Positions 389 to 30,345 of a stretch of 64,000 nt of DNA are shown here, in pieces. Positions within the stretch are counted from its first letter, which is position 1; each line of letters begins with the position of its first letter. The position numbers and the translations under genes are program-made. The stretch lies in IMG/VR virus record IMGVR_UViG_3300034104_005687, positions 1 through 64,000 of that record. One strand, given 5' to 3'. The notes under the pieces were generated by a model. That model worked only from the letters and a program-made list of their open reading frames with translations. It did no database searches and had not been told where the DNA came from.

Positions 389-561
389 AAGACGAATCGC
401 ACTTACCGGTCTCTGAACAGAGTCTGGTATTTAGACTGCGTAAGAGGGCAGAGATCCGTAGGCAGATTCAGGATCGCAAGAGTGTACAAGAAGGTCGTCC
501 AGACCGCATTGCAGACTTGCTGGAAGAAGCTGCCAACGAGATTGAGTGTTTATCTAAGTAA
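385..561 (+). CDS. Small hypothetical phage protein (58 aa, MKDESHLPVSEQSLVFRLRKRAEIRRQIQDRKSVQEGRPDRIADLLEEAANEIECLSK)
   Basis: Translated by hand (below ORF-track cutoff); ATG overlaps the TGA of 191..388; helical, charged. Confidence 0.75.
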   Translation: MKDESHLPVSEQSLVFRLRKRAEIRRQIQDRKSVQEGRPDRIADLLEEAANEIECLSK

Positions 562-1716
562 AATCTGTTTTACCCTTGCAAGATCAATGTTTTGCAAGGG
601 TAATTCTTTTCCGTCTATTCTGCCGTTGTTCCAGAGTCGAATCGACCGTTCAAAGTTGTTGACCAATTCGTCCACAATTTGATGTTTAAACGTAGTCCAT
701 AAGTGGTCAAAGTTGTGCTCTAGTATTGGCTGCATTTCTTTGTGCATTTCTCGCAGTTCTAAGTCACTCATGGCACACAGTCGACTGGTTTGATCAACAA
801 TGGCCTGCAGTCTCTGATCTGGGTCTTTTATGTTGTCGTAGCTTTCGTCAATCCACTGATCAAAAGTTCGAAATCCATAACTTTTTAAATACGCAAGATT
901 GCCCGGAGCCGCGGCCAGCATGAACGGTCGCTGCGCCACAATGGGTTTGAATATTTTTTCTGTGAGGTGCAGTTTGTCATGATAAAACACTGTTTCGGTC
1001 ACAATGTGCCAAAGCCCCGACTTCCACAGTTCAAACTCTTGGTGCCCAAAGTTGGCACTCAAGCTACCGGTGCTGGTTTCGCAATCCAAGATCAGGGGTT
1101 GATCAAGATGCTGTGCAATCATGTTGCAGGCCTCACTGCTTAGACGAGTGTTGGGGTTGGTCAATTCTTGGCGCCAGGTACCGTATTCGGTGTGCCCGAG
1201 ATGCAGGCTCACATGTCCTTGATCCAGCAAGTTTTGTTCTGCTAGACGTGCCGCAAGGTTTAGTCTATAACTGCGATCGTTGACATGCAATCGATTCAGT
1301 GTGATGTAAGGACGAGTCCAGTCAATATGTTGGTCAAAGTATTGACCATCCTGATACCAGTCAAGGGCAGCAAAGCCGTGAAAAAAGTAATACCAATCTT
1401 GACATTGATGTTCGTGACACAAGTGTTTTTTTAATTTGCTGATTTCGCTGTTGGCCAACATCTTGAAATGTTTTGGAGTAGTCCATTCCATTAGATCAGC
1501 AATTGGCATTGATTGCACAGGCTCTTGATCAAAATAATAACAAGAGTTTACTCCCGAAAATATCTTCCCGTACATGCTTGTATTTTTAAAATACCGTCCA
1601 AGTCGTATATCAACTGGATCAGTTGATCCAAAATTTATGTGCATAGTGTCCTGTAGACCCAGCGGTTTTAACAGATGACTATGCAAAATATAGTAAAAAT
1701 TTTCGATGGAAAACAT
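550..1716 (-). CDS. Putative glycosyltransferase, GT10-like 'TEK-x-FKP' family (paralog 1 of 5)
   Basis: WHIVTETVFYHDKLHLTEKIFKPIVAQRPF...LKSYGFRTFDQWIDESYD; YYFFHGFAALDWY is shared with 15116..16246. Confidence 0.55.
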   Translation of the reverse strand: MFSIENFYYILHSHLLKPLGLQDTMHINFGSTDPVDIRLGRYFKNTSMYGKIFSGVNSCYYFDQEPVQSMPIADLMEWTTPKHFKMLANSEISKLKKHLCHEHQCQDWYYFFHGFAALDWYQDGQYFDQHIDWTRPYITLNRLHVNDRSYRLNLAARLAEQNLLDQGHVSLHLGHTEYGTWRQELTNPNTRLSSEACNMIAQHLDQPLILDCETSTGSLSANFGHQEFELWKSGLWHIVTETVFYHDKLHLTEKIFKPIVAQRPFMLAAAPGNLAYLKSYGFRTFDQWIDESYDNIKDPDQRLQAIVDQTSRLCAMSDLELREMHKEMQPILEHNFDHLWTTFKHQIVDELVNNFERSIRLWNNGRIDGKELPLQNIDLARVKQILLR

Positions 1717-1726
1717 ATGGAGACAG

Positions 1727-1733
1727 TATTTAA
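1727..1733 (-). promoter_or_regulatory. Late-promoter-like TTAAATA upstream of 550..1716
   Basis: TAAATA core 10 nt upstream of the ATG at 1716; T4 late consensus is TATAAATA. Confidence 0.45.
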
Positions 1734-1738
1734 CAACG

Positions 1739-1756
1739 GTAATACTGTAGTATTAC
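1739..1756. repeat. Perfect 8-bp inverted repeat GTAATACT-GT-AGTATTAC (operator-like)
   Basis: Seen directly in the divergent intergenic region. Confidence 0.6.
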
Positions 1757-1761
1757 AAATT

Positions 1762-1817: not shown

Positions 1818-1847
1818 ACACACATGTCAACAAAACAAGGAACTGCA

Positions 1848-8990: not shown

Positions 8991-9320
8991 ATGGCAATAA
9001 CAACCAATTATCCAGACGAATACAAGCAATGGCAGCCTGAACGGGTTGAACTCATTGGAGACCGAGCTGTAAAGTTTCGTGACGTATGTGTACACGAGAT
9101 CCGCATGGGCGACGTAGAAGATCCGGATTTAATGGTTGCTGAACCAATTTGGAGGTGGCAAGAATCAGATGCTGGTAAGTTTATAATGGAGCATGCCAAG
9201 GATAAACCTTACTGGACTCGTAGCATAGATCCGCACACGTATGGACACATGTACCGCATCATAGCAAGATTAAGTGAGCAGGATCAAATCTTTTGGACAT
9301 TAAAGTGGGGTAACAAATGA
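8991..9320 (+). CDS. Hypothetical protein
   Basis: 109-aa ORF; ATGA overlap with the epimerase gene. Confidence 0.75.
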   Translation: MAITTNYPDEYKQWQPERVELIGDRAVKFRDVCVHEIRMGDVEDPDLMVAEPIWRWQESDAGKFIMEHAKDKPYWTRSIDPHTYGHMYRIIARLSEQDQIFWTLKWGNK

Positions 9321-10285
9321 AAATATTAGTAACAGGCGGACTAGGGTTAATTGGTCACAATGTAGTGCAAAGACTAGAAGCCCGAGATCACGAAGTGATC
9401 ATCACAGACACTCGTACCAACTACGGAATTATTCCACAAGCAGAACTTGATTACTTGATGGGCGAGCGGTTAAAGAAGATATCAGGCAACAACATCTATC
9501 ACATTGACATTACCAATGCCGAAGACTTTGACTGGTTGGTAGGCAAACACAAGCCCGAAGTAATCATTCACATGGCAAGTTTTCCCCGACAGAAAGTTGT
9601 CAATGCTAACCCTGCCTGGGGCAGTCGTGTTATGATGGAAGGGTTGATCAACGTTTGTGAGAGTGCCAAAAAGCACAATGTAGAACGTGTTGTGTACATA
9701 TCTAGTTCAATGGTGTATGGTGATTTTGAAGATCAAGTAGAAGAAGACTACGACTGCCGACCCATTGGACAATATGGCATCTTAAAATTAACTGGAGAAG
9801 ACCTTGTCAAAGACTACCATCGTCGCGGTGCTTTCGATTACGCTGTTATTAGGCCTAGTGCTGTATACGGGCCACTGGATGTGGAAGACAGGGTCGTTGC
9901 AAAATTTATGCTCGGAGCCATGCGAGGTAGCGTTCTCCGAGTTAATGGGGCAGGGGAGACGTTAGACTTTACCTATGTAGATGATGCCGCTGATGGTATT
10001 GTAGCAGCCGCTACTCGTATCATGGCTCGTAACAATACCTACAACATTACTAAATCGCATTCAGTTAGTTTGTTAGAAGCCGCAGAGATGATTGTGAAGA
10101 TTGTGGGCAAGGGTGAGATCGAAACTCGAGACAAAGATGCAGACTTTCCCAGTCGCGGTGCACTGAACATTGATCGTGCCAGGACCATACTAGGCTACGA
10201 TCCCAAAGTTGATGTAGAAGAAGGATTCCAAAAGTATTATGACTGGCTTTCGAATTCCGTTTACTGGTCTCCAAAGACAGTATAA
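9317..10285 (+). CDS. NAD-dependent NDP-sugar epimerase/dehydratase (extended SDR)
   Basis: TGGLGLIG Rossmann motif, YISSSMVYG, YGILK (YxxxK), RPSAVYGP, DFTYVDD. Confidence 0.92.
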   Translation: MKILVTGGLGLIGHNVVQRLEARDHEVIITDTRTNYGIIPQAELDYLMGERLKKISGNNIYHIDITNAEDFDWLVGKHKPEVIIHMASFPRQKVVNANPAWGSRVMMEGLINVCESAKKHNVERVVYISSSMVYGDFEDQVEEDYDCRPIGQYGILKLTGEDLVKDYHRRGAFDYAVIRPSAVYGPLDVEDRVVAKFMLGAMRGSVLRVNGAGETLDFTYVDDAADGIVAAATRIMARNNTYNITKSHSVSLLEAAEMIVKIVGKGEIETRDKDADFPSRGALNIDRARTILGYDPKVDVEEGFQKYYDWLSNSVYWSPKTV

Positions 10286-18432: not shown

Positions 18433-19002
18433 CTTGGTATATTCGCCCAAGGTAATGTAACAACAAATTCGTTGCACTGATTCAGGAACCTCACGTTCCA
18501 TATCGTGCCATAATAATTTTTTAACACCGCCACATGTGTGAGAATTAAACATCAGGTATCCGGTGTTTGTAACACTGGGGAATCGATGCACAACATCACT
18601 GTCTGAATTGGTGTTGAAAAATGTTGTACCTATCGTGGTATCATTGTTGGGCAAAAGGTATATTTGCATAGCCGATGGCAGTGTACCATCACAGTGCATA
18701 CCAGGTCTAAAGCCGGGTTCGTCTATCCACCAGCTCAGACTCCAGTACTTTTCATCTACAAACCTTACTCCACATGCTTGTTCAATTTGTGGACGTAGAG
18801 TTTTGCGTGCATAATCTTCCACATCGAAGAAAAACGGTAGGTCAGGTCCGCAAAACATCTTGCGCTTGCTTCTTCCTATCTCCAATCGTTGATATGACAT
18901 TGTGTTCCAGGAACATGATATTATCTGTGACAAAATATTGCTAGGAAATACCTCTGCAACAGAGTACAAATAGCCACAAGAATCAACTGATTGAATCAAC
19001 AT
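18427..19002 (-). CDS. 2OG-Fe(II) oxygenase-like protein
   Basis: HCD (HxD), MQIYL, GTTF, GYLMFN, distal WH and R. Likely start at the TAATG overlap (19002; ORF track 19011). Confidence 0.65.
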   Translation of the reverse strand: MLIQSVDSCGYLYSVAEVFPSNILSQIISCSWNTMSYQRLEIGRSKRKMFCGPDLPFFFDVEDYARKTLRPQIEQACGVRFVDEKYWSLSWWIDEPGFRPGMHCDGTLPSAMQIYLLPNNDTTIGTTFFNTNSDSDVVHRFPSVTNTGYLMFNSHTCGGVKKLLWHDMEREVPESVQRICCYITLGEYTKL

Positions 19003-20489: not shown

Positions 20490-20587
20490 TTGTAGATAAA
20501 TGGATCTCGTTTGCGGAGCTCTTTGAGCTTTTTACGATAACGAATTTCCAGGGTGATTCGTGCCCATAATCTCTTGATCCAGTTCAT
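20486..20587 (-). CDS. 33-aa basic peptide MNWIKRLWARITLEIRYRKKLKELRKRDPFIYK
   Basis: Translated by hand; ATGA overlaps at both ends fill the gap exactly. Confidence 0.7.
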   Translation of the reverse strand: MNWIKRLWARITLEIRYRKKLKELRKRDPFIYK

Positions 20588-21627
20588 TTCAATTCCTTTA
20601 TTTGCTGTTCAGCATAGTCTGGATCGCTCCAGTTGTATGTGTATGTAGCTGAAATATTGCCAATTTGAATTTTATACACATCCAGGTGTTGAGCCAGCTG
20701 TGCCCAAATTTGTTCATAGTCTGTGGTACCAAAACTCTTGATCAAATTGACCTGAGCCACTTTGGGATGCCCTATGGTCAAACTTTTGTCTTCGGGGTCA
20801 AATCCGTTTTGTGTTAGCCAGGTTCTGAACTCTGCCAGTTGTTTTTGTTGCCAATAGTACGCACCCGGATCACGTGCCCATTCAATATCAAAGTCCCCAG
20901 CGGCTTGTGTTTGTGCTCGCAGTGAAGTTGTGGTCAACTCGCTGAGCCGCGAATCTCGACCTTCGTCGTTGAACACTTCCCAATGTGCTTTGCCCACAGC
21001 TTTGTTGACTCCCACATACACTCCGCCTAACTGTCGATTAATTGTTTCAATGCCAAACAGTTCGTAGTCTTCGGGCCCTAATTCAAATCGGGGTGCTCGC
21101 AGCCAACACATCAATTGACTGGGACGACGCCACTCAGGTGCTTGAATCACTTTACGCATGCTGAGCACCAGGCTTTCCAGTTCATGACACAAGAGATTTA
21201 GTTGTCGAATGTGCCAGCGAGTAACATCATCTGCTGCGGTATAGTACGGACTCATGGCTCCTGACACACCTTGTAGATCTTCAAAGTAGCGGTGCAACCA
21301 ATTCATGCGTTCATGATTGATGTCTAGGTCTGACTGTATCACTGATTCCACATTGTAATCAGGGCACACAATGTGATAGCCTAGGTTGGCTTGATTCACG
21401 GCTGTGATGCTGCGATTGATCTCTCCACAAATGTATTCAGCTGTGCGTTCGCTCTCAGTCCACCCCAGCCAACAGTAGTTCTTTTCCAAATGATATTGAT
21501 TCTGCACTAGATGCTGCAAGGCGGCGTGCCATTTACGTCCAAGACTGGTGTCAGGAACATCAATATACACTGGCAAAGTGCTGCCGGTGCGTGAGCTGCG
21601 TAATGTTATTGTGATTTGGTCAAGCAA
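20584..21627 (-). CDS. Hypothetical protein (LHRYFE / CHELE motifs)
   Basis: 347-aa ORF coupled to neighbours by overlaps. Confidence 0.8.
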   Translation of the reverse strand: MLDQITITLRSSRTGSTLPVYIDVPDTSLGRKWHAALQHLVQNQYHLEKNYCWLGWTESERTAEYICGEINRSITAVNQANLGYHIVCPDYNVESVIQSDLDINHERMNWLHRYFEDLQGVSGAMSPYYTAADDVTRWHIRQLNLLCHELESLVLSMRKVIQAPEWRRPSQLMCWLRAPRFELGPEDYELFGIETINRQLGGVYVGVNKAVGKAHWEVFNDEGRDSRLSELTTTSLRAQTQAAGDFDIEWARDPGAYYWQQKQLAEFRTWLTQNGFDPEDKSLTIGHPKVAQVNLIKSFGTTDYEQIWAQLAQHLDVYKIQIGNISATYTYNWSDPDYAEQQIKELK

Positions 21628-22912
21628 TTTGATCCCACCATTTCTTTATTTCAGGTCTCGCACTCAATATTGTGGCCATGTCTGTGGGCGCTGTGCGAAT
21701 ACTTTCTAATTTTAACACACGAGCCTTGCCTTGAGCAAGAGCAGACTGATAAGTGTCAGGCCATTGTTGTTCAAAAGTAGGTCTTGATTTTAACTGCGTT
21801 AGCACATCTCTCATGCTGGTTGCTGTGCATTTTGCAATCAATTCATCCAACCAAGGGTCCAGCAAATGTCGTGGCAAGGCCAAAGGACTCATCACAATGT
21901 CTGGAGAAAAGCTGAACATTACCTTGCTCAACAATTCTACATCATACTGCTGTGCCAATGCCTGTATGGCATCTACTTCAAACATACCTGGTAGAGTAAG
22001 TGTAAAGTCCAGTCTCATTTGTCTACGGTTTTGTTGATGTTGGCGTCCTGCTTCGAAGTTTCTGCAGAAAATATTGTAGTCGAGGCCTGTTCTAATGTAT
22101 TCACCAATTGCTCCAGTGCCGTCAATGCTTGCGCAAATTTGCCAATCTTGTATATGATCCAAAATATCGCTGTAAAGATTGCACCCGCGATAATCAATTC
22201 TGCTAAGGTTAGTGTTGTATCTAGCGTAAACATTTTTTCCATCCCCTAGTTCCACAATTCTTTTCATGTAGCGCCAATGCTGTTCATACATTAGAGGTTC
22301 GCCGCCAACCCAGTATATTTCTTCTACTCGGTGTTGCTCTACAGCATCACTGAATTCTTGTTCAATCTGCTGATCTTGAAACTGCGAGATTTGTTGTCGT
22401 ACACTGGGAGTCATCCAGTTGTTTTTAGAATTTGCCCAATCAACCATGTTGTGAGTTTTTTGTTCTGTTTCCCAGGATGACGACAACATGTCTCCGCAAG
22501 TTCTACACTTAAAGTTACATAGGTTACTGAACCTATAATCCCAGCTAACAGGTTGCATTGTGGTGGCTCCACTGGCATCAGTTGTGGCATATACTTCTGA
22601 TATTTTGTGCCCAAACAGATGACCAAAGTAGTCTCTGTACACGCTGGTGTTTAACAATTTTGAATTACAAACATCGCACTCGGGTAATGTTTCGCCGGCC
22701 ATCATTCGTCGACGTACACTCCGCATGTGTTCGCTGTTCCAGTGTTGCTCCAGTGTGGCAGGAATATACTGACCTGTGCCTGAACTAGTATCTATATATT
22801 GTTCAAAGTTCTGTGCAGGTTCACGACTAGCGCAACACAATCGTCGTTCAGTTTGCGGGCTAAGATATGTGTGAGTCCAAGGTGCAAGACAAAGAGTATC
22901 AGGTTTTTTCAT
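21620..22912 (-). CDS. Radical SAM protein with N-terminal Twitch/SPASM-like Cys motifs (rSAM 1)
   Basis: CLAPW...RLCC...CDVC, then NLCNFKCRTC (CxxxCxxC) and VGGEP. Confidence 0.92.
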   Translation of the reverse strand: MKKPDTLCLAPWTHTYLSPQTERRLCCASREPAQNFEQYIDTSSGTGQYIPATLEQHWNSEHMRSVRRRMMAGETLPECDVCNSKLLNTSVYRDYFGHLFGHKISEVYATTDASGATTMQPVSWDYRFSNLCNFKCRTCGDMLSSSWETEQKTHNMVDWANSKNNWMTPSVRQQISQFQDQQIEQEFSDAVEQHRVEEIYWVGGEPLMYEQHWRYMKRIVELGDGKNVYARYNTNLSRIDYRGCNLYSDILDHIQDWQICASIDGTGAIGEYIRTGLDYNIFCRNFEAGRQHQQNRRQMRLDFTLTLPGMFEVDAIQALAQQYDVELLSKVMFSFSPDIVMSPLALPRHLLDPWLDELIAKCTATSMRDVLTQLKSRPTFEQQWPDTYQSALAQGKARVLKLESIRTAPTDMATILSARPEIKKWWDQIA

Positions 22913-23864
22913 AAATTTGTTGGCATATCCAAGTATATAACTGTTCTAACCCGTGTTCTAAATTATCTGGTGGCTCCCACCCTAACACTTGTTGCACCAA
23001 AGTATTATCACTGGTACGGCCCATAACTCCAAGAGGACCGTCGATGTTGCGTATGCTCACAGACTTGTTGGCCAACTTGCTAATCAAAAATACCAGCTGG
23101 TTAATAGTGATCATTCGTTGACTACCAATGTTGATAGGTTGTGTGTAATTGCTGTCCATTAATCGATGAATACCTTCTATACACTCGTCAATGTAAAGAA
23201 AACTGCGTGTTTGTGTACCTGGACCCCAAACGTCAACAATGCCTTGATCTTCGCATTGTAGAACTTTGCGACACAGCGCAGCAGGGGATTTTTCTCTACC
23301 CCCGGTCCAAGCGGATTCAGCACCAAATACATTGTGCAGCCTGGCAATTCGAACATCGATACTGTGGTTACGAGCAAAGGTTGCATACAAACGTTCACTG
23401 AACAATTTTTCCCAGCCGTATTCAGAATCAGGTTCTGCCGGATATGCGCTGGCCTCGCTCATTACAGGATTGTCAGGATCTTGTTGATTGTAAGCAGGAT
23501 AAATGCATGCACTGGAACTGTAAAATATTTTTTTAATCTTCTTAAACACCATTTCGTGCAAGATATTCAAATTAATAATTGCCGAGTTGTGCATGATCTC
23601 AGCGTCATTGTTGCCAGTAAAGATATATCCTGCGCCGCCCATGTCTGCTGCCAACTGATATATTTCATCTATGTCCCGTGTAATCAATCTTGTGACTTGG
23701 CGTTGGTTGCGAAGATCCACAATATGGAATTCATTGGCATCAGTTTGACTAAACTCTGGACGATGTAGGTCAGCGCCTACAACATAGTGTCCTTGTGCTC
23801 TCAAACTCCGAACCAAGTGTGCACCAATAAATCCGCCTGCACCACAGACCAATACTTTTTTCAT
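22899..23864 (-). CDS. GDP-mannose 3,5-epimerase-like NAD-dependent epimerase
   Basis: GAGGFIG, QLAADMGGAGYI, FYSSSACIYP, YPAEPDSEYGWEKL, WTGGREKSPAALCRK; these are GME-family motifs. Confidence 0.85.
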   Translation of the reverse strand: MKKVLVCGAGGFIGAHLVRSLRAQGHYVVGADLHRPEFSQTDANEFHIVDLRNQRQVTRLITRDIDEIYQLAADMGGAGYIFTGNNDAEIMHNSAIINLNILHEMVFKKIKKIFYSSSACIYPAYNQQDPDNPVMSEASAYPAEPDSEYGWEKLFSERLYATFARNHSIDVRIARLHNVFGAESAWTGGREKSPAALCRKVLQCEDQGIVDVWGPGTQTRSFLYIDECIEGIHRLMDSNYTQPINIGSQRMITINQLVFLISKLANKSVSIRNIDGPLGVMGRTSDNTLVQQVLGWEPPDNLEHGLEQLYTWICQQIYEKT

Positions 23865-24466
23865 TCAGTTGCTTTCGTATAATATTCAGCCACATGTTTG
23901 TGTACATCGCTATCAACTATGTGGTAATAAGGGCGATAGCTTCTAGTTCTAGCATAATCCCAAAGATTTATTTTGCTACGATACTGGTCAAACTGTTCAA
24001 AGTATATATTTGTACTACCAAAACTAGAATGTTCAAAGCCGCCTTGGTCGAATAAAAATGGAATACTGCTCTGTACTAACTTATGAAGAGTATTCTCGAT
24101 TATGCACTTGTTCTCATACACAGCTAACTCGAGATCAAAAAATTCTGTGTAGTATTGTTTGAGAATTTTCAATTGAGTTGAATCAAAAGGTGTGGTTGTT
24201 TGATTGGCTGTGTGATAACTAAAAGGTACTACTGCACCGTTGTGTCTTGTTTGACTGCGTGTGCATGCAGTGCCCTGAACTATTATATAATCTGCAGATT
24301 CTGCAATGGCCTGATCAACTTGCATGGATATCATTAAATTTGTTGCAGACACACAGGCCAAGTTTGTCACTGAGTGCTGCTGAGCCAAATAATCTACCCA
24401 GCACGGACCGTATTCAGGATCACTGACACAGAAACTATCGCCGCAAATGTAAACTCTTTTTTTCAT
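23861..24466 (-). CDS. SGNH/GDSL-like hydrolase or acyltransferase
   Basis: Block I ICGDSF near the N-terminus, VTNLA, and a C-terminal His (YHIVDSDVH). Confidence 0.45.
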   Translation of the reverse strand: MKKRVYICGDSFCVSDPEYGPCWVDYLAQQHSVTNLACVSATNLMISMQVDQAIAESADYIIVQGTACTRSQTRHNGAVVPFSYHTANQTTTPFDSTQLKILKQYYTEFFDLELAVYENKCIIENTLHKLVQSSIPFLFDQGGFEHSSFGSTNIYFEQFDQYRSKINLWDYARTRSYRPYYHIVDSDVHKHVAEYYTKATE

Positions 24467-25467
24467 CCTAGAAACTTTTGCAAATCTCCAATGATTTCTT
24501 TTTCAAAGCGTTGTAAAACTTGATCGCGATCAAAGAATCTAGCATGATTATGCTGTAATTTTTGTTCAGTGTACGAATCAATACCAATATTGCCACTGCG
24601 GAACCTGGCAACATTATCTAGTATCAACTCAGTTACAACATTGTGTCTGCCTTGGTCTGATTCAACTAAGTCGTAGCTTTCGTCCCAAAGATTGTCAAAG
24701 GTCTCAAATCCTTCTCTGCGCAAGTATTCAAGTGTGCCAAGACTGCCGTATACAACCATAGGATGATAAAACATGCCTGGCTTAAAAAGTTTTTCACTGA
24801 CCTCTGTGCGGTAGTTGGGAACCGTTGGACAGGCAATCCAGGGGTCTGACCTCATGTAGCTTTCTACAACCACGCTGAAAAATGTAGAGTTGTACCACAT
24901 GGGGTTGATATAAAATTCCCAAAAAATACTATTGTCGATAGTATGATCTTTGTCACCGGGCACAAATATGTCTTTTTCAACATAGCTCCACAGGGCCTGA
25001 TCCAATACTGGTCGCAGTTTTTCCTGTGCTTGATCTCTGTGCCAGCGTGTTTTGTGCATAGGCATAAAAAATGCATGCGTATAGTTTCGCTGCGGAACAT
25101 AGTTATGATAGCCTTGCTCCATAAAACGTATGCACTCTCGATACCAAACCCAGTTACCGTTTCGCAAAATCAGTCTACCGTTTTTTACAGTGCTAGGTGT
25201 GTCAACATCGCTGTCCCATAAATGATCTACTACTACACGAAAGCCTGCTTGTTCAAACGGTGTAAACCATCCTGTTGAGTTGCGTGTTTCAACTTCTTCA
25301 ACATGTGTGATCAATATCACTGTGTCACATGGATTGTAGGTCTTGGCAGCATCATAAACTTCTATGTTGTACCATGGCTCTACAATACGCTGAATATCCC
25401 CGCTTATAAAACAAGGATGGTTGCCTTGTTGATAAATGAAACGAATTTTACTCATACCGGTAATCAA
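24463..25467 (-). CDS. Putative GT10-like glycosyltransferase, TEK-x-FKP family (paralog 4)
   Basis: FSVVVESY...EVSEKLFKPGMFYHPM...GFETFDNLWDESYD. Confidence 0.55.
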   Translation of the reverse strand: MITGMSKIRFIYQQGNHPCFISGDIQRIVEPWYNIEVYDAAKTYNPCDTVILITHVEEVETRNSTGWFTPFEQAGFRVVVDHLWDSDVDTPSTVKNGRLILRNGNWVWYRECIRFMEQGYHNYVPQRNYTHAFFMPMHKTRWHRDQAQEKLRPVLDQALWSYVEKDIFVPGDKDHTIDNSIFWEFYINPMWYNSTFFSVVVESYMRSDPWIACPTVPNYRTEVSEKLFKPGMFYHPMVVYGSLGTLEYLRREGFETFDNLWDESYDLVESDQGRHNVVTELILDNVARFRSGNIGIDSYTEQKLQHNHARFFDRDQVLQRFEKEIIGDLQKFLG

Positions 25468-26659
25468 TTATCTCAGCAAGTTCGGGTGCAACTGTGGCCA
25501 AGTTTTGTTGGCGCTTACGATCTAGGTCACGCACTTTCATACGCAACATGAATCCATCAGTTGATGCACCACGACGCATGAAGTCACAAATTCGATCAAA
25601 TTCGTCACGCCATTGAGACGGAATGCTGGCAGATTCTAAGTGCAATATGATGTCGTTCTTGGCTGATTCTGGCAGGGTTGCAATACTGAAATACCAGGCG
25701 TCATGCATCATGTTCCAGTACACAAAGTCAAATCCTTGACCAGCAATCCAATTAGCCAGCTGATCAATATATCGAACATTGAACACATTTACAGTACTGC
25801 AACACTGTAGTCGGATGTTGGGATAGTCTTTCCTTAGTAAACGGAAACGATCAATATTGAATACTACGTCTGACCATACAGCGTTTGAACGCTGATATTC
25901 AAATCTTGCGCCTAGGTCATCAATTGAAAATGCTATTTCCACAGTTTTAAAATGCTTCCAAATTTCAATAGCTTGCTCTGGATATTGTGTGCCATTGGTA
26001 TTGTAGTGTATTTCAACTTGATGCGCGATGCCACGATCCACAATACCTTGCAGCATGGCAAAATGTTGTTCAATCATGAATGGTTCGCCGCCAGTGAACT
26101 CAATATAACGAATGTCTGTTAAATGCTGGTCGATCTGATTCCAGAACTGCAGATTTTCTTTGGGCCAGGCGCCGGCACGCAACATTTGATATGCATAGGT
26201 ACTTTTCTTTTCTTCAGGAGGTGCATCGTTGATCTCTTCGGTAGCAAACTGACTTGAACTCCAAGATCCACATATGCGACATTTTAGGTTGCAGATATTG
26301 CCCAGCTTGAGATCCAGAAACATCAAAGGTTTGGCATCTTCGGTCCAGGTCTGATTGCCAATTATATGCTTGAGCCGATCCAGTGTGTGCATACGTTTGC
26401 TAGTACGGCCAGATCGTTCTTCGTTCCAGCACTTTCTACAAGTTTGCGGTTTTTCGCCTGCAAGAAATTGTTGTCGCAATTCACGCATGCCACCACTGTT
26501 CTGAATATTGCCAAAGTCTGCTGTAAGCAAATTGAACTTTTTGCCAGCATCATCCACAAGTTCGTCGTCGGCTAGACAACAAGGTCTCACAGTACCAACA
26601 GGGCTGGCTTCTAGACTAATCCAGGGCAGCACACAGAATGTAGGGTGTGGTATGTTCAT
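25448..26659 (-). CDS. Radical SAM protein with N-terminal Twitch/SPASM-like motifs (rSAM 2)
   Basis: CVLPW...RPCC...CRKC; NICNLKCRIC; FTGGEP. Confidence 0.92.
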   Translation of the reverse strand: MNIPHPTFCVLPWISLEASPVGTVRPCCLADDELVDDAGKKFNLLTADFGNIQNSGGMRELRQQFLAGEKPQTCRKCWNEERSGRTSKRMHTLDRLKHIIGNQTWTEDAKPLMFLDLKLGNICNLKCRICGSWSSSQFATEEINDAPPEEKKSTYAYQMLRAGAWPKENLQFWNQIDQHLTDIRYIEFTGGEPFMIEQHFAMLQGIVDRGIAHQVEIHYNTNGTQYPEQAIEIWKHFKTVEIAFSIDDLGARFEYQRSNAVWSDVVFNIDRFRLLRKDYPNIRLQCCSTVNVFNVRYIDQLANWIAGQGFDFVYWNMMHDAWYFSIATLPESAKNDIILHLESASIPSQWRDEFDRICDFMRRGASTDGFMLRMKVRDLDRKRQQNLATVAPELAEIIDYRYE

Positions 26660-27915
26660 TTTAATGCTCGCAATTCAGGAATTATGTTCATAATGTTTTC
26701 ATTTCTAATAGAATCTAGCTCATAGGTCTTGCGCCAAAATGTGTCTAGTAGGTGTGTGTTGTCAGTCTGCATCATGAAATTAATTGCACTCTCAAATCCC
26801 ACTGTGGCTCTGGACAATTGATCTTGTGGCCTCAGCCATTCAATATGCTGTTCAAATTTGTGCTTAATCTGTTGTTTATACTCAGTAGTAGCAATGTCTA
26901 TTCTGTAGTGTACTGGATCTTGCAAGATATTTACATTTAAGTCTTGCGCTCGTAATAGGCCTTGCTCAACCCAGTCACGATGAAAATCTGGCAGGTGCAG
27001 GGCGTTCATGATGCTTAGAGTGGGGCTGATATAGAAGTCTACTTCGGGGCATATTCTCATCATGTCTCGGCGATTCTGTTCTACCACTGCCCAGTCTGTG
27101 CCTTTGCGTATGTATTCACCTCTAGCACCAGATGCGTCTAGGCTAGCACCAACTGCTACTGATTTGAACTGGCTCCAATACTCAAACACTGATCGGCCTT
27201 TGAGGTCGGTGTGGGTAAAGTTGGTGTTGTAGATCAGTCGCACATCAAATCGCTTTCTGCGTACCAGTTCGTCAAGAATACGATAGTGTTCCTCCATCAG
27301 CAAGGGCTCGCCACCAGCAAAGTAAATCTGTTCCACGTAGTCAAGATGAGGCTCTAGTTGTGACCACATGTCTGTTTCTGTGCGCCCAGCATAGTTCAGC
27401 ACTGTGTTGCGGTCTTTCCAGTCACCGCCGGCCAGCTTGGCCTGATCCTGATACCATTGGCTGCTAAAGATGTGTCCACAGCTACGACATTTCAAATTGC
27501 ACAGGTTGCTGAATCTAATATCCCAGTAAGTCATTTCAAAAGGATTTGACTCTAGCTTTTTGATGTGATGTCCGTGATGCTTGTTGGCGCTTTTACGACC
27601 ACTAAAGAATCCTGATGCTTCTTGTTCATAACAACGACCGCAAGCAGCGTTGGAGGTTTCACTCAGCATGTCTTTGCGCAACTGTGCCATGGGCTGATCA
27701 CGCCATATTTCTTCAAGAGTATTGGTACGACAATTGCCTACTTGGCCCACGCCCATTTCAGCATGACAACAAGGATATGCTTCACCTGTGGGATATGCAT
27801 GCAGGTGAATCCAAGGATAGATGCAAAAGGTCTTGGAATCTTGTAGCAAGAATTCTTCACGGTCGGTAAGGTCCACTGGCTTTACCAAGTCTGATGAGTT
27901 GTAGTTATAGGTCAT
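26656..27915 (-). CDS. Radical SAM protein with N-terminal Twitch/SPASM-like motifs (rSAM 3)
   Basis: CIYPW...YPCC...CGRC; NLCNLKCRSC; FAGGEP. Confidence 0.92.
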   Translation of the reverse strand: MTYNYNSSDLVKPVDLTDREEFLLQDSKTFCIYPWIHLHAYPTGEAYPCCHAEMGVGQVGNCRTNTLEEIWRDQPMAQLRKDMLSETSNAACGRCYEQEASGFFSGRKSANKHHGHHIKKLESNPFEMTYWDIRFSNLCNLKCRSCGHIFSSQWYQDQAKLAGGDWKDRNTVLNYAGRTETDMWSQLEPHLDYVEQIYFAGGEPLLMEEHYRILDELVRRKRFDVRLIYNTNFTHTDLKGRSVFEYWSQFKSVAVGASLDASGARGEYIRKGTDWAVVEQNRRDMMRICPEVDFYISPTLSIMNALHLPDFHRDWVEQGLLRAQDLNVNILQDPVHYRIDIATTEYKQQIKHKFEQHIEWLRPQDQLSRATVGFESAINFMMQTDNTHLLDTFWRKTYELDSIRNENIMNIIPELRALK

Positions 27916-29252
27916 AGTGTGTTGTACCAGTTGGTAATATCAGCCCTGATACCAAATGTTTCGGCAAAGTTCTTGTTGCGGCGGCGGTCGTACTGTGAGA
28001 AAAACTCATGAAAGTCGTTGAGCAAGCGAGGCATGTCAAATGCTTCTGAATGCGGAGTTTCAACTACATCCAAGTAATCGATTAACCTCTGCAAGTGATC
28101 CAGTTCATGTTCATGAAACAAGGGATTGTGCTGATTGCGGTAGTGTAGTTCTTTTAGTTCTGCAGCAAATCTAGCACGTAGGTCATGTGGCATTACCAGC
28201 GCACTTTGAAAACTGGGAAATCTCAAAATATTCAAGGTGTAACTTACTGCGTCACGCCCGTGGCGTTGCTTTAATTCTAGTAGATAACGCAAATGGTCAG
28301 ACAAGCTGGGCAGGCACAGTGCATTGATTGTGCCCATAAAGTGCAGGGTGCGTACACGCCTACTGGCCAAGATCTTTTCTACATTTGCCTGCCAGGCTGT
28401 GTAATCTAGGCCATCACGTATGTATTCAGCTTGGACACCCACGGCTTCCTGACTGGTATAGATATCTACATCCAGTCCTTGTATTGAATCCAACAGTCGG
28501 TCTACATCTACATCTGCACCTAGATTTGAGTTGATGGCCAGGCGTGTGTTGCTTCGCCCTGGATTGTTGCGAAACCAGTCAATCAGCTTCCAGGTATGGC
28601 CGCTCATTAAGGGCTCTCCACCAGTGATTCTTAACTCTTGTAGGGTGCTATGCAGATCTGATTCCCACCATGCAAAAAAAGCTTCAACATACGGATTGGT
28701 CTCCCCGAAACGATACAGTTGAGCACTTGAGTGCTCATGTGTAAAGTGATTACGACCGTCAGACACAAGGCCCATATAGGGTCCGTTATTCCTAATATCT
28801 TTAACCCATGTTGAGCTAAAAGCAGGATTGCAGTAACTACAAGCAAACTGGCAGGTCCGATCAAAAGCAATTTCAAGAGTTCGCAAATCAACATCTTGGT
28901 CAACTGGAGTTTCATATGCTTCCTTTAATGCAGCAATGGGGTAAATCTTTGACTTGTACACACGGTCGCTGACAGCATCACGACCCATGTCTTCAATTTT
29001 CCAGCAGTATTCGCAACCTGCAGGACGTTCACCTGCAATCATTTTGGCACGATCAGCTTTCTTTTGCGGTGTATTGTGCAGCAGCTTAGGGTTGGTTGTG
29101 ACTTTATCAATGTCCACCAAATGAGCTGGCGGGTGGTGGCAGCTGGTGCTCATGCCGCTACCAAGCCAAATGGTAGCATTAAACCACTTTGCGCCACAAA
29201 AACTAGGGCTCAGTGTGTCCAGTACTTGCTGGCGAAATTCAAGATCGTTCAT
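27912..29252 (-). CDS. Radical SAM protein with N-terminal Cys/His motifs (rSAM 4)
   Basis: CGAKW...SCHH...CEYC; RTCQFACSYC; ITGGEP. Confidence 0.92.
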   Translation of the reverse strand: MNDLEFRQQVLDTLSPSFCGAKWFNATIWLGSGMSTSCHHPPAHLVDIDKVTTNPKLLHNTPQKKADRAKMIAGERPAGCEYCWKIEDMGRDAVSDRVYKSKIYPIAALKEAYETPVDQDVDLRTLEIAFDRTCQFACSYCNPAFSSTWVKDIRNNGPYMGLVSDGRNHFTHEHSSAQLYRFGETNPYVEAFFAWWESDLHSTLQELRITGGEPLMSGHTWKLIDWFRNNPGRSNTRLAINSNLGADVDVDRLLDSIQGLDVDIYTSQEAVGVQAEYIRDGLDYTAWQANVEKILASRRVRTLHFMGTINALCLPSLSDHLRYLLELKQRHGRDAVSYTLNILRFPSFQSALVMPHDLRARFAAELKELHYRNQHNPLFHEHELDHLQRLIDYLDVVETPHSEAFDMPRLLNDFHEFFSQYDRRRNKNFAETFGIRADITNWYNTL

Positions 29253-30345
29253 TTAGATAATTTAGTAGATTTTGTGGCAGTAGAGCACGTTGCTCACGAT
29301 TGTACTCCACAAGATGTTGCTGATTGTATTTACAGATGTCGCGGCTGGCCTTCCAGAAATCCCCAGAGCCCGAGTAACTTATGGCACGTACTGTATCTAT
29401 TATACGCTCACTCCTGGCTTGTGGACAATCAATTTGGTCGTAGCTTTCGTCTAACAATGTGTGAAATGTTTGAAATCCTGCGTTGCGTAGATCTCGCAAA
29501 TAGCCCTGATTGGCTGCAACCACAAATGGGTGTGCCATCAGAATAGGCTTGTAGATCTTTTCTGTACGAAATGTGTGCGGATAATCAAAAATGGTTTCTG
29601 TTACCAAACTGAACCAGGTGTCTGTGTAGCAACGATGATTCACAATAGCATCGCCCCAGGTGTTGTTGAACAGTTGATGTTTGACAAAGCCTGCGTCAGG
29701 GACTGCGTTTAACTGCGGCACAGCACGATCTATTTCGTATTCAGGCGGCAACAAACGTATAGGTTCTGTTTTGCCTGTGTCCAACGCAGACGTAAATGCC
29801 ATTTCGACTTGACTGCCCAAATTGGTCCACAGTGCATGTGACAACATGCCTTGTGCTCTTAGATGATCCATTAGGTACTTGCGGTGTGGTCGCAATCGTC
29901 CGTTAAGGAACAAAAATTCATAAGGACGATGTTCTTTGTATTCCAAGGCACCTTCAATCTGTGCTGCCTTGTTTTCTGTGTACTCCACTATGTTAGAGAA
30001 GTAGCAATCTGTTTTGCAATAACGCCACCCTGGTTCTAAGTCGCCAGAGGTCAACAAACCAATGCGACCATCGCGCACATGGTCAGCGATACGCAATCGT
30101 CGGAGTTGCAGCAACACAGTTTCAGATCCTTCAGCAGGATTTGAAAACACAATGCTCCCTGGATACTGAGTAGCCCACTCTGTGATTTCTGTCCAGTGCT
30201 GTTTCAACAGCACACGGCCCACAATGTACACAGTGTTGGGATCTAACTCAGCAGGCCATTGCCAGAATTCTTCGTCAGAATAGGGCTTCAACAAGTCATA
30301 GACTTCGGCCCAGGTGTCTACTGCAATCTTATGTGACCCTAGCAT
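29239..30345 (-). CDS. Putative GT10-like glycosyltransferase, TEK-x-(F/Y)KP family (paralog 5; start moved from 30501)
   Basis: WFSLVTETIF...FRTEKIYKPILMAHPF...GFQTFHTLLDESYD; ATG 30345 overlaps the end of rSAM 5. Confidence 0.55.
   Translation of the reverse strand: MLGSHKIAVDTWAEVYDLLKPYSDEEFWQWPAELDPNTVYIVGRVLLKQHWTEITEWATQYPGSIVFSNPAEGSETVLLQLRRLRIADHVRDGRIGLLTSGDLEPGWRYCKTDCYFSNIVEYTENKAAQIEGALEYKEHRPYEFLFLNGRLRPHRKYLMDHLRAQGMLSHALWTNLGSQVEMAFTSALDTGKTEPIRLLPPEYEIDRAVPQLNAVPDAGFVKHQLFNNTWGDAIVNHRCYTDTWFSLVTETIFDYPHTFRTEKIYKPILMAHPFVVAANQGYLRDLRNAGFQTFHTLLDESYDQIDCPQARSERIIDTVRAISYSGSGDFWKASRDICKYNQQHLVEYNREQRALLPQNLLNYLNERS

What the first reader, a model, noticed from the sequence alone, without database searches (positions are those of the whole stretch)
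550..30345. Five-member GT10 (fucosyltransferase)-like family alongside a GDP-mannose-3,5-epimerase-like gene
All five share (V/L)xE(T/S)...(T/S)EKx(F/Y)KP...G(F/Y)xTF...D(E/N)SYD (seen). This resembles the GDP-binding FENS...YVTEK...IPIYWG motif of alpha-1,3-fucosyltransferases (established motif; match made by eye). GME produces GDP-L-galactose/L-gulose, and GT10 enzymes accept GDP-L-galactose (established). The phage may therefore supply its own L-configured GDP-sugar to a family of linkage-specific transferases (inference).
Basis: partly seen in the sequence, partly recalled or inferred. Interest (0 to 1): 0.62.

Follow-up and report, generated by a model that had tools for sequence, protein, structure and literature searches.

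The report
Phage GT10-like glycosyltransferase family plus GME
A 349-kb lake-water jumbo phage carries nine copies (five in this window) of a large, unnamed, phage-restricted family of GT-B glycosyltransferases that only distantly resemble fucosyltransferases, set in a sugar-tailoring gene island with a genuine GDP-mannose 3,5-epimerase, so the phage probably builds its own decorated glycan.

Summary
Five ORFs (550-1716-, 15116-16246+, 16230-17420+, 24463-25467-, 29239-30345-) are true paralogues sharing E..(S/T)EK.FKP..G..TF..D(E/N)SYD. Four more copies lie at 297-330 kb of the same 349-kb phage genome.

An AlphaFold model (pLDDT 93.6) is a GT-B glycosyltransferase. Its 50 best structural matches are all GT-B enzymes. 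T4 DNA beta- and alpha-glucosyltransferases and H. pylori alpha1,3-fucosyltransferase are tied at the top (Z 10-11).

It is not a GT10 member by sequence: no Pfam PF00852 hit in 97 members, in the genome, or with my own GT10 model. Profile-profile comparison does align the family's motif in register with FENS..TEK..IPIYWG, weakly (P 0.002; P 3e-4 through a divergent paralogue subfamily). GT4 and GT9 controls give nothing comparable. So this is a new GT-B family, most likely a distant GT10 relative, with about 13,000 clusters that are almost all viral.

The epimerase is a real GME: about 50% identical to plant GME, catalytic Cys, Tyr and both Lys kept. But GME accompanies the family only in close relatives, and another paralogue sits beside a GalE. 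A GME-fed family is therefore at most partly true.

The genes sit among N-twitch radical SAM enzymes, an amidinotransferase, a carbamoyltransferase and an aminotransferase. The acceptor is unknown; I favour virion proteins.

The parts
550..1716 (-). GT-B glycosyltransferase paralogue 1 (388 aa), the copy most typical of the family
   Evidence: E 1.4e-131 against the family HMM. Motif VTET..TEKIFKP..GFRTF..DESYD.
15116..16246 (+). GT-B glycosyltransferase paralogue 2 (376 aa), the copy that was modelled
   Evidence: AF2 pLDDT 93.6, pTM 0.92. All top-50 structural matches are GT-B enzymes. Conserved E59, R171, E257, E269, K270.
16230..17420 (+). GT-B glycosyltransferase paralogue 3 (396 aa); overlaps paralogue 2 by 17 nt
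   Evidence: E 1.1e-82 against the family HMM; alignment.
24463..25467 (-). GT-B glycosyltransferase paralogue 4 (334 aa, most divergent N-terminal domain), two genes upstream of GME in the same operon
   Evidence: E 1.2e-43 against the family HMM; motif VVES..SEKLFKP..GFETF..DESYD.
29239..30345 (-). GT-B glycosyltransferase paralogue 5 (368 aa from the ATG at 30345; the longest ORF runs to a GTG at 30501)
   Evidence: E 9.6e-76 against the family HMM, with the match starting at ORF residue 58. The ATG at 30345 overlaps the upstream rSAM stop by 17 nt.
22899..23864 (-). [quoted passage not shown]
   Evidence: E 8e-89 and 1.5e-87 to solved plant GMEs over the full length. The motifs SSACIYP (Cys145), YGxEK (Tyr174, Lys178) and GGREK (Lys217) are kept.
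21620..22912 (-). N-terminal-twitch radical SAM enzyme 1
   Evidence: NF033640, 285 bits against a cut-off of 170.
25448..26659 (-). N-terminal-twitch radical SAM enzyme 2
   Evidence: NF033640, 336 bits.
26656..27915 (-). N-terminal-twitch radical SAM enzyme 3 (modelled)
   Evidence: NF033640, 389 bits. AF2 pLDDT 88.4. Nearest folds are anSME, CteB, BlsE and SkfB. Invariant C31/C49/C92/C95 plus C139/C143/C146 and GGEP.
27912..29252 (-). N-terminal-twitch radical SAM enzyme 4
   Evidence: NF033640, 277 bits.
30329..31831 (-). N-terminal-twitch radical SAM enzyme 5 (the true start is probably an internal ATG)
   Evidence: NF033640, 305 bits, match from residue 62.
17404..18432 (+). Amidinotransferase-family enzyme (AGAT/StrB1-like), the most conserved neighbour of the GT family
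   Evidence: E 3e-17 to L-arginine:glycine amidinotransferase and 6e-12 to inosamine-phosphate amidinotransferase. Present in 56 of 80 viral loci that carry the family.
19002..20489 (-). Carbamoyltransferase (NodU/CmcH/TobZ type)
   Evidence: Pfam Carbam_trans_C 4.6e-46 and Carbam_trans_N 1e-38. In 38 of 80 loci.
9317..10285 (+). Extended SDR nucleotide-sugar epimerase/dehydratase
   Evidence: Pfam Epimerase 6.7e-43. The best solved relatives are UDP-sugar epimerases and decarboxylases, E about 1e-27.
10239..11342 (+). DegT/DnrJ/EryC1-type sugar aminotransferase
   Evidence: Pfam 6.3e-67. The best solved relatives are Gln:scyllo-inositol transaminase 6e-46 and QdtB 1e-38.
11314..15117 (-). 1267-aa repeat protein with a C-terminal domain; diverges from paralogue 2 with overlapping start codons
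   Evidence: PPYxYxF repeats. The C-terminal domain is homologous to ORF 32501-33424, E 7e-9. In 40 of 80 loci. CATG start overlap.
20584..21627 (-). Conserved operon gene of unknown function (347 aa)
   Evidence: No Pfam or PHROG hit. Present in 38 of 80 loci.
23861..24466 (-). Small operon gene (201 aa) between GME and paralogue 4; function unknown
   Evidence: No Pfam or PHROG hit. 4-nt overlaps with both neighbours. The N-terminal GDS motif was seen by eye only.
32501..33424 (-). ORF homologous to the C-terminal domain of the 1267-aa protein, with a DGD motif
   Evidence: BLASTP E 7e-9. In 28 of 80 loci.

Best explanation
The five ORFs, plus four more in the same genome, are paralogous soluble GT-B fold glycosyltransferases. 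They belong to a very large, so far unnamed, essentially phage-restricted family. Its nucleotide-sugar-binding C-terminal motif (strand ending in E257, then helix starting (S/T)-E269-K270, then P280 and a strand) is the distant counterpart of the GT10 fucosyltransferase motif FENS..TEK..IP.

By analogy with GT10, they are probably metal-independent inverting transferases. In FUT9, Glu137 is the base and Arg202 and Lys256 hold the diphosphate. Here the N-domain Glu59 would be the base, and Arg171 and Lys270 would hold the diphosphate.

They are embedded in a tightly packed island of about 24 kb (9.3-33.4 kb). Its core is an operon with overlapping stops and starts on the minus strand (31831 to 20584). 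The island also encodes a genuine GDP-mannose 3,5-epimerase, five N-terminal-twitch radical SAM enzymes, an amidinotransferase, a carbamoyltransferase, an SDR and a sugar aminotransferase.

The most likely reading is that the phage assembles its own multi-sugar, heavily decorated glycan in the infected cell. Each paralogue makes one linkage, and GME supplies GDP-L-galactose or GDP-L-gulose for at least one of them. Paralogue 4, two genes upstream of GME, is the best candidate for that.

Shown: paralogy, the GT-B fold, the conserved residues, GME identity, and the neighbourhood. Inferred: GT10 kinship (weak statistics), the inverting mechanism, GDP-L-sugar use, and the acceptor. I favour virion proteins as acceptor because the operon follows the tail, hub and fibre genes on the same strand.
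For: Paralogy and motif.

Fold: AF2 pLDDT 93.6, pTM 0.92. All 50 best of 48,161 chains are GT-B glycosyltransferases. Z values are T4 BGT 10.8-11.4, H. pylori alpha1,3-FucT 10.0-10.4, T4 AGT 10.2, FUT11 9.2-9.4, FUT13 8.5-8.8 and FUT9 8.0.

GT10 link: hhalign of the family against 129 bona fide GT10 sequences gives P 0.0019, aligning VTET..TEK..PF with FENS..TEK..IPIYWG. The divergent paralogue subfamily (46 sequences) against GT10 gives P 3.4e-4, 30% identity over 53 columns and 38% probability, while it matches the main family at 98.6%. Controls: GT4 P 0.36 and GT9 P 0.08, in unrelated positions. The nearest named language-model clusters are all PF00852, score 0.80. GT10 catalytic roles come from PMC12717137.

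GME: E 8e-89, with Cys, Tyr and both Lys conserved.

Island content.

Conserved neighbourhood in 80 viral loci: amidinotransferase 56, N-twitch rSAM 50, repeat protein 40, carbamoyltransferase 38.

Precedent: cyanophage S-SCSM1 has a sugar island with GME, GMD, GFS, carbamoyltransferase, Asn synthase, methyltransferases and fucosyltransferases.
Against: No sequence method reaches significance for GT10: Pfam, my own HMM, and an hhalign probability of at most 38%.

The structural ranking does not separate GT10 from the UDP-glucose-dependent T4 DNA glucosyltransferases, which differ by less than 1 Z unit.

I could not superpose the model on a GT10 structure residue by residue, so the roles of E59, R171 and K270 are argued from order, conservation and secondary structure only.

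GME is absent from all 52 distant loci that carry the family, and a GalE-type enzyme flanks another paralogue. The donors are therefore probably diverse.

Nothing identifies the acceptor. No RNA or protein evidence was found: every run that holds the stretch is DNA.
Confidence: 0.68

Rival explanations
1. The paralogues are DNA-modifying glycosyltransferases, like T4 beta- and alpha-glucosyltransferase. They would decorate hydroxymethylated or otherwise modified bases of the phage genome with sugars to evade host nucleases.
For: T4 BGT (Z 10.8-11.4) and AGT (Z 10.1-10.2) are the top or tied-top structural matches. The genome is a jumbo phage with ThyX, GTP cyclohydrolase I and several B12-radical SAM enzymes, which are typical companions of base modification.
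Against: The genome has no thymidylate-synthase-type hydroxymethylase (PF00303) and no TGT/DpdA (PF01702). Nine paralogues plus aminotransferase, amidinotransferase, carbamoyltransferase and GME imply a longer and more decorated glycan than any known DNA sugar. The Z scores are tied with GT10 and only 1-2 above generic GT4 hits. The conserved E..TEK..P motif matches GT10.
Confidence: 0.1
2. The island is an auxiliary 'host cell-envelope' module, as proposed for cyanophage S-SCSM1. The enzymes would remodel host LPS, capsule or exopolysaccharide during infection, for example to exclude superinfection, rather than glycosylate the virion.
For: There is an analogous gene set in S-SCSM1, interpreted that way by its authors (PMC9602691). 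The closest cultured-phage GME homologues are all from cyanomyoviruses.
Against: The island contains no flippase, polymerase, lipid-carrier priming transferase or membrane protein. The GTs are soluble with no predicted membrane segment in the model. The operon is co-directional with and directly downstream of the tail, hub and fibre genes. None of this is decisive.
Confidence: 0.14
3. The cluster makes a small diffusible pseudo-oligosaccharide of aminoglycoside or aminocyclitol type, not a glycoconjugate.
For: The enzyme set resembles aminoglycoside pathways: a Gln:scyllo-inositol-type transaminase, a StrB1/AGAT-type amidinotransferase, a TobZ/NodU-type carbamoyltransferase, twitch-type radical SAM enzymes and GT-B transferases.
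Against: No inositol or 2-deoxy-scyllo-inosose synthase, exporter or resistance gene was seen. All of these families are also ordinary nucleotide-sugar tailoring enzymes. Nine GTs far exceed any aminoglycoside pathway. No benefit to a lytic phage is apparent.
Confidence: 0.05
4. The proteins have a GT-B-like fold but are not glycosyltransferases. They could be non-catalytic structural or binding proteins, or another kind of group transferase.
For: No experimental data exist for any member. There is no significant sequence link to any characterised enzyme.
Against: Invariant acidic and basic residues sit exactly at the canonical GT-B donor site across 97 diverse sequences. All structural neighbours are active GTs. 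The context is sugar metabolism.
Confidence: 0.04

Closest known systems
CAZy GT10 / Pfam PF00852 alpha1,3/4-fucosyltransferases (H. pylori FucT 2NZW/5ZOI, FUT9, plant FUT11/FUT13)
   Same: GT-B fold, Z 8-10.4. The C-terminal donor motif has the same order and nearly the same spacing: a strand ending in E, then (S/T)EK starting a helix, then P and a strand. There is a conserved N-domain Glu after a beta-strand and a conserved Arg at the start of the first C-domain helix, as in FUT9 (Glu137, Arg202, Lys256; PMC12717137).
   Different: No significant HMM hit in either direction. ENS is replaced by ET or ES. The E-to-EK spacing is 12 residues instead of 10. There is an extra invariant G(F/Y)xTF..D(E/N)SYD..R block that GT10 lacks. 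A longer insert lies between the Arg helix and the motif. The N-domain is unalignable. The donor is unknown.
T4 DNA beta-glucosyltransferase (GT63) and alpha-glucosyltransferase (GT72)
   Same: Phage-encoded, soluble, compact GT-B enzymes of similar size. They give the highest or tied structural Z, 10.1-11.4.
   Different: No shared sequence motif was seen. The T4 enzymes act on hydroxymethylcytosine DNA with UDP-glucose. This genome lacks a PF00303 hydroxymethylase and has nine paralogues in a sugar-tailoring island.
Cyanomyovirus sugar islands (Synechococcus phage S-SCSM1 ORF112-135; GME also in P-TIM68, S-SSM7, S-SM2 and others)
   Same: A phage-encoded GME, 52-56% identical, next to a carbamoyltransferase, Asn synthase, methyltransferases and several fucosyl- and glycosyltransferases.
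   Different: The cyanophage island uses GT11, GT23 (NodZ), GT65 and GT2-type enzymes plus GMD and GFS. It has no member of this family and no N-twitch radical SAM enzymes. This family was not found in any of 50,697 GenBank phage records.
Autonomous glycosylation machinery of giant viruses (chloroviruses, mimiviruses; PMC4691112)
   Same: The virus encodes both nucleotide-sugar synthesis and a battery of cytoplasmic GTs to build an unusual, methylated and amino-decorated glycan on virion proteins. GT10-domain proteins are common in Nucleocytoviricota.
   Different: Those are eukaryotic viruses with experimentally determined glycans. Here the virus is a tailed phage, the glycan is hypothetical and the GT family is different.

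Membership tests
CAZy GT10 / Pfam PF00852 (Glyco_transf_10) | Significant sequence similarity to the family model | tested here: not met
   No PF00852 hit at E<=10 in any of 97 family members or at E<=1 in the five. No hit over the cut-off in the whole genome. My own HMM of 129 GT10 proteins gives a best family hit of E 0.11.
CAZy GT10 / Pfam PF00852 (Glyco_transf_10) | GT-B fold | tested here: met
   AF2 pLDDT 93.6. H. pylori FucT Z 10.0-10.4, FUT11 9.2-9.4, FUT13 8.5-8.8, FUT9 8.0.
CAZy GT10 / Pfam PF00852 (Glyco_transf_10) | alpha1,3-FucT motif F..FENS....Y(V/I)TEK......IP(I/V)(Y/V).G | tested here: inconclusive
   E, TEK, P and G are kept in register. N and S are replaced and the spacing is +2. 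hhalign gives P 0.0073 and 0.0019 (probability 5-14%) for the main family and P 3.4e-4 (38%) for the divergent subfamily. Controls: GT4 P 0.36 and 0.04, GT9 P 0.08 and 0.28.
CAZy GT10 / Pfam PF00852 (Glyco_transf_10) | Catalytic constellation: N-domain Glu base plus Arg and Lys on the diphosphate | tested here: inconclusive
   E59 (>=90%), R171 (>=90%) and K270 (invariant) are conserved in the same order and the same secondary-structure positions. No residue-level 3D superposition was possible with these tools.
CAZy GT10 / Pfam PF00852 (Glyco_transf_10) | Uses GDP-beta-L-fucose (or GDP-L-galactose) with inversion | not testable with these tools
   Needs enzyme assays.
GDP-mannose 3,5-epimerase (EC 5.1.3.18), for ORF 22899-23864 | Full-length similarity to characterised GMEs, well above other SDRs | tested here: met
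   E 8e-89 to 1e-86 to solved plant GMEs. The next family, UDP-glucuronate decarboxylase, scores only 2e-25.
GDP-mannose 3,5-epimerase (EC 5.1.3.18), for ORF 22899-23864 | Catalytic Cys145/Lys217 acid-base pair and the Tyr174-x3-Lys178 SDR dyad; GxxGxxG NAD site | tested here: met
   All are conserved in the HMMER alignment to 2C59: SSACIYP, YGxEK, GGREK, GAGGFIG.
GDP-mannose 3,5-epimerase (EC 5.1.3.18), for ORF 22899-23864 | Product GDP-L-galactose / GDP-L-gulose | not testable with these tools
   Needs HPLC or NMR of the reaction.
NCBIfam NF033640 N-terminal-twitch radical SAM (five neighbouring ORFs) | Score above the curated cut-off; CX3CX2C plus four N-terminal Cys | tested here: met
   277-389 bits against a cut-off of 170. 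Invariant C31/C49/C92/C95 and C139/C143/C146. Nine copies in the genome.
T4-type DNA glucosyltransferases (GT63/GT72) | Genome makes hydroxymethyl-pyrimidine DNA as the acceptor | tested here: not met
   No PF00303 homologue in the 97%-complete genome. Fold similarity alone is present.

The most novel reading that the evidence does not exclude
Tailed jumbo phages of lakes carry an autonomous, giant-virus-like glycosylation system built from two phage-specific enzyme families that expand together: GT10-like GT-B transferases and N-terminal-twitch radical SAM enzymes, nine copies each in this genome. The transferases and radical enzymes would alternate with an amidinotransferase and a carbamoyltransferase to assemble a radical-tailored, guanidino- and carbamoyl-decorated L-sugar glycan on virion proteins. 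Such a glycan chemistry and such a GT-rSAM partnership have no described counterpart.
Probability: 0.2. Interest if true: 0.8.

Novelty: new variant of a known kind. Interest (0 to 1): 0.55.

Why it matters
If the reading is right, about 13,000 sequence clusters of 'hypothetical' phage proteins become a new glycosyltransferase family with a testable active site (E59, R171, E269, K270). That would add a CAZy-level family sitting next to GT10.

It would also show that large freshwater phages invest tens of kilobases in making their own decorated glycans, as chloroviruses and mimiviruses do. This bears on virion stability, host recognition and immune or defence evasion.

It would give a source of enzymes for L-galactose or L-gulose transfer, which are rare activities in biocatalysis.

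The GME annotation also corrects a common mislabel. At least 37 cyanophage records carry the same enzyme, mostly named UDP-glucose 4-epimerase or generic nucleotide-sugar epimerase.

Tried and rejected
Pfam, PHROGs and NCBIfam gave no hit for any paralogue.

HMMER profiles A1 and A2 against all PDB sequences gave only chance hits.

tblastn of two paralogues against 50,697 phage records found no match. The window's own record may be hidden from that search.

The GTDB genome scan found only MAG contigs that look like binned phage. The search pattern was narrow, so this is not proof of absence.

Long fusion proteins (700-1000 aa) were examined for informative partner domains. They are tandem duplications without Pfam domains. 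One Atlas cluster is fused to an MTS methyltransferase.

The PF00852 model and my own GT10 HMM gave no significant hit.

I searched for a family member in the S-SCSM1 sugar island and found none.

The DNA-glycosylation idea was checked through PF00303 and PF01702. Both are absent.

I looked for Ser/Thr-rich acceptor-like regions in the neighbouring giant structural proteins and found nothing distinctive.

A radical SAM model was searched against the PDB to guess its substrate class. The hits are generic SPASM/twitch enzymes that act on peptides (anSME, CteB, SkfB) and on sugar nucleosides (BlsE), so the result is not informative.

Literature searches for N-twitch rSAM with glycans or phage found nothing relevant.

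Only DNA (lake metagenome) runs hold the locus, so I did not use read laying. Complex prediction was not used because no binding claim is made. The model coordinates are not exposed, so I could not superpose on GT10 structures residue by residue.

Full report
WHAT IS THERE. The window is the first 64 kb of a 349,369-bp IMG/VR virus record judged 97% complete. The same stretch is held, nearly identical, by lake-water metagenome runs from at least 19 studies. So this is a recurrent freshwater jumbo phage.

For the last one the probable start is the ATG at 30345, which overlaps the stop of the upstream gene by 17 nt.

Overall they are 22-29% identical and share the stated C-terminal motif. Pairwise BLASTP E-values among them run from 6e-9 to 3e-31. 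Each scores E 1e-43 to 1e-131 against a family HMM.

It is incomplete, though. The same genome holds four further, more divergent copies at 297043-298101(-), 312901-313917(+), 324721-325677(-) and 328364-329539(-). All keep E..(S/T/A/C)EK and D.SYD-like blocks.

HOW BIG THE FAMILY IS. No Pfam, PHROG or NCBIfam model matches any copy. A word-based search found more than 6,880 homologues, all 'hypothetical'. An exhaustive HMMER profile search of 1.84 billion cluster representatives found 13,189 clusters at E<=1e-3 and 10,078 at E<=1e-10. Many of these are tandem two-domain fusions.

Structure-based Atlas neighbours are 94-100% viral, commonest phylum Uroviricota. Two paralogues found nothing by tblastn in 50,697 GenBank phage records. 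A pattern scan of 185,579 species genomes found only MAG contigs. Among them are two contigs of 183 and 148 kb in a Haliscomenobacter MAG that carry 74-77% identical copies and look like a binned relative of this phage.

FOLD. I built a 97-sequence alignment (A2). Its invariant columns, in the numbering of 15116-16246, are E257, E269, K270, G297, F301, D310 and R317. Columns conserved at 90% or more include E59, R171, T258, T268, K273, P274 and P280.

AlphaFold2 gave pLDDT 93.6 and pTM 0.92. A Foldseek-independent comparison with 48,161 PDB representatives returned GT-B glycosyltransferases in all 50 top rows:
- T4 beta-glucosyltransferase, Z 10.8
- T4 alpha-glucosyltransferase, Z 10.2
- H. 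pylori alpha1,3-fucosyltransferase, Z 10.0
- POGLUT enzymes, Z 9.3-9.4
- FUT11, Z 9.4
- FUT13, Z 8.5
- FUT9, Z 8.0
- many GT4, GT5 and GT20 enzymes, Z 7-9.5

The second look over Foldseek's 1000 best chains gave the same picture: BGT 10.8-11.4, HpFucT 10.4 three times, AGT 10.1-10.2. Foldseek itself gave only E about 2e-3. But structure alone does not choose between GT10, GT63 and GT72, because the differences are within 1 Z unit.

IS IT GT10? By sequence it is not a member. PF00852 hits none of the 97 members even at E<=10 and nothing above cut-off in the genome.

I collected bona fide GT10 proteins: nine from bacterial genomes and 120 more carrying PF00852 and PF18025. An HMM built from them gives no significant hit on any family member. 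The best is E 0.11, on the TEK region of a divergent paralogue.

The family against GT10 gives P 0.0073 with 9 sequences and 0.0019 with 129. The single local alignment puts the family's VTET..TEK..PF in register with FENS..TEK..IPIYWG.

A profile of 46 homologues of the divergent paralogue 324721-325677 matches the main family at 98.6% probability (E 1e-15). It matches GT10 at P 3.4e-4, with 30% identity over 53 columns and 38% probability, sharing PG..(S/T)EK and IPI..G.

Controls built the same way gave the following:
- GT4: P 0.36 against the main family and 0.04 against the subfamily. The second falls at the topologically equivalent EX7E site.
- GT9: P 0.08 and 0.28, at unrelated positions.
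- GT4 against GT9, as a check on the method: 94.8% probability.

A protein-language-model search put PF00852 clusters as all the nearest named neighbours, but at 0.80, which is a lead only.

My reading is that this is a separate GT-B family whose donor-binding motif is the distant homologue of the GT10 motif. I would not file it as GT10.

MECHANISM (inferred). In the model, E257 ends a beta-strand (250-256), E269-K270 open the next helix (269-276) and P280 precedes the next strand (281-284). That is the canonical GT-B C-domain donor site. R171 lies in the first helix of the C-domain, and E59 follows an N-domain strand (52-55).

In GT10 enzymes a Glu of the N-domain is the proposed base, and an Arg and the Lys of TEK hold the diphosphate. 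In FUT9 these are Glu137, Arg202 and Lys256, and the reaction is metal-independent SN2 inversion (PMC12717137).

The same order of conserved residues here suggests an inverting, metal-independent transferase with E59 as base. I could not superpose coordinates, so this step is inference. The invariant G(F/Y)xTF..D(E/N)SYD..R block has no GT10 counterpart and its role is unknown.

THE EPIMERASE. ORF 22899-23864(-) matches solved plant GDP-mannose 3,5-epimerases at E 8e-89 to 1e-86 over its full length, at roughly 50% identity. The next SDR family scores only 2e-25. The alignment to 2C59 keeps the Cys145/Lys217 acid-base pair, the Tyr174-x3-Lys178 dyad and the NAD-binding glycines. This is a GME, and that part of the finding is correct.

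It is not unprecedented in phages. 37 phage records, nearly all cyanomyoviruses, encode 52-56% identical proteins, mostly annotated 'UDP-glucose 4-epimerase' or generic epimerase. S-SCSM1's authors already noted GME beside fucosyltransferases (PMC9602691).

CONTEXT. Between 9.3 and 33.4 kb the genes are packed with overlapping stops and starts.
- Plus strand: SDR 9317-10285 and DegT aminotransferase 10239-11342.
- Minus strand: a 1267-aa repeat protein, 11314-15117. Its ATG overlaps the ATG of paralogue 2 (CATG).
- Plus strand: paralogues 2 and 3 and an amidinotransferase, 17404-18432 (E 3e-17 to AGAT, 6e-12 to StrB1).
- Minus strand, in order of transcription: rSAM5, paralogue 5, rSAM4, rSAM3, rSAM2, paralogue 4, a 201-aa ORF, GME, rSAM1, a conserved 347-aa ORF, then a carbamoyltransferase and a 194-aa ORF.

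The five radical SAM proteins are NF033640 'N-terminal twitch' enzymes at 277-389 bits against a cut-off of 170. They have four invariant N-terminal cysteines plus CX3CX2C. The genome has nine of them. A model (pLDDT 88.4) resembles anSME, CteB, BlsE and SkfB, which does not tell peptide from sugar substrates.

The other four GT paralogues also sit among sugar and tailoring genes: DUF6492 proteins, a methyltransferase, a SPASM rSAM, a GalE-type UDP-hexose 4-epimerase (E 7e-66), a truncated DegT, an Asn-synthase-like amidotransferase and B12-rSAMs.

Upstream on the same strand as the operon lie large structural genes: a 4900-aa FG-GAP protein, 1246- and 833-aa proteins, and a hub-like protein.

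IS THE ASSOCIATION CONSERVED? In 80 viral loci carrying the family, unbiased clustering of neighbouring ORFs gave the following counts:
- amidinotransferase-like gene: 56 loci
- N-twitch rSAM: 50
- repeat protein: 40
- carbamoyltransferase: 38
- the 347-aa ORF: 38
- DegT: 34

Many of these loci are relatives, so part of this is synteny. True GME (high score) occurs in 22 of the 28 loci with at least 40% identity. It occurs in none of the 52 more distant ones, where only weak cross-hits of at most 45 bits to other SDRs appear.

So the family as a whole does not depend on GME. At most one or a few paralogues of this lineage use its product. Paralogue 4, two genes upstream in the same operon, is the obvious candidate. 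The GalE next to paralogue 312901-313917 points to UDP-hexoses for that copy.

VERDICT ON THE INTERPRETATION. It is partly supported. The GT-B fold, the GT10-like motif and GME are supported. GT10 membership is not met. 'A family fed by GME' is supported for at most a subset.

The best overall explanation is a phage-encoded glycan assembly line, analogous to the cyanomyovirus sugar islands and to the autonomous glycosylation of giant viruses (PMC4691112). It differs from both in being built from a new GT family and an expanded radical SAM family.

The acceptor is unknown. I favour virion proteins, on two grounds: soluble enzymes, and co-orientation with the structural genes. The rivals are listed here with my confidences:
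- Host-envelope remodelling: 0.14.
- DNA glycosylation: 0.10. It is weakened by the absence of PF00303 and PF01702.
- A small aminoglycoside-like product: 0.05.
- A non-catalytic GT-B-like protein: 0.04.

LIMITS. There is no expression or protein evidence, because only DNA runs hold the locus. No residue-level structural superposition was possible. The hhalign statistics are weak. The phage-record and genome scans may hide the window's own record and used narrow patterns.

Noticed in passing
window 21620-31831 (-); genome 137612-139875 (+), 150300-151496 (+), 221613-222716 (-): There are nine NF033640 'N-terminal twitch' radical SAM genes in one phage genome, the same number as the GT-like paralogues. 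Five of them are interleaved with GT paralogues 4 and 5 and GME in one operon. The substrate class is unknown; the nearest folds are anSME, CteB, BlsE and SkfB.
   Followed up: partly
window 17404-18432 (+): This is an amidinotransferase-family gene (AGAT/StrB1/HsvA/SxtG-like). It is the single most conserved neighbour of the GT-like family, present in 56 of 80 viral loci. That hints that a guanidino or amidino decoration, or an Arg-derived acceptor, is central to the system.
   Followed up: partly
window 11314-15117 (-) and 32501-33424 (-): A 1267-aa protein carries at least 8 repeats of a W.P.P.DPPY.Y.FGNQ module spaced about 65-130 aa apart, plus a C-terminal domain homologous (E 7e-9) to the separate ORF 32501-33424, which has a DGD motif. 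No Pfam family matches. Its ATG overlaps the ATG of GT paralogue 2 on the opposite strand (CATG at 15115-15118), so there is no intergenic promoter space.
   Followed up: partly
window 39206-53908 (-): A 4900-aa ORF has a single FG-GAP repeat hit. It is followed by 1246-, 473-, 501- (hub/VgrG-like, weak DUF2345 and Phage_base_V) and 833-aa ORFs. This is probably a tail, fibre and baseplate module directly upstream of the glycan operon on the same strand.
   Followed up: no
genome 311383-314790 (L013:1383-4790): A GalE-type UDP-hexose 4-epimerase (E 7e-66) is followed by a truncated 200-aa DegT-like ORF, GT-like paralogue 312901-313917 and then GTP cyclohydrolase I. Two B12-binding radical SAM genes lie at 316.6-318.6 kb and 330.5-332.5 kb. 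No TGT/DpdA or ThyA-type gene is present in the genome.
   Followed up: partly
L015, L016, L020 (NZ_JBBAKG010000001.1 and ...003.1): A Haliscomenobacter sp. MAG contains contigs of 183 kb and 148 kb with 74-77% identical copies of the GT-like gene. They are probably a relative of this jumbo phage binned with a bacterium, so either mis-binning or a hint at a Saprospiraceae host.
   Followed up: no
phage records H2-H26 (for example KM359505.1 155693-156673; GU071098.1 200680-201660): GME orthologues (52-56% identical, E about 1e-112) occur in 37 cyanophage and marine virus records. They are mostly annotated 'UDP-glucose 4-epimerase' or 'nucleotide-sugar epimerase', which is a likely systematic under-annotation.
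   Followed up: partly
window 2068-3150 (+), 4743-6023 (+), 8278-8970 (+): These are a MoxR/CobS-like AAA+ ATPase, a VWA (CobT-like) protein and ThyX (identified by eye from the translations; no family scan was run on them), a set typical of large marine and freshwater myoviruses. GT paralogue 1 (550-1716) sits apart from the main island next to these genes.
   Followed up: no
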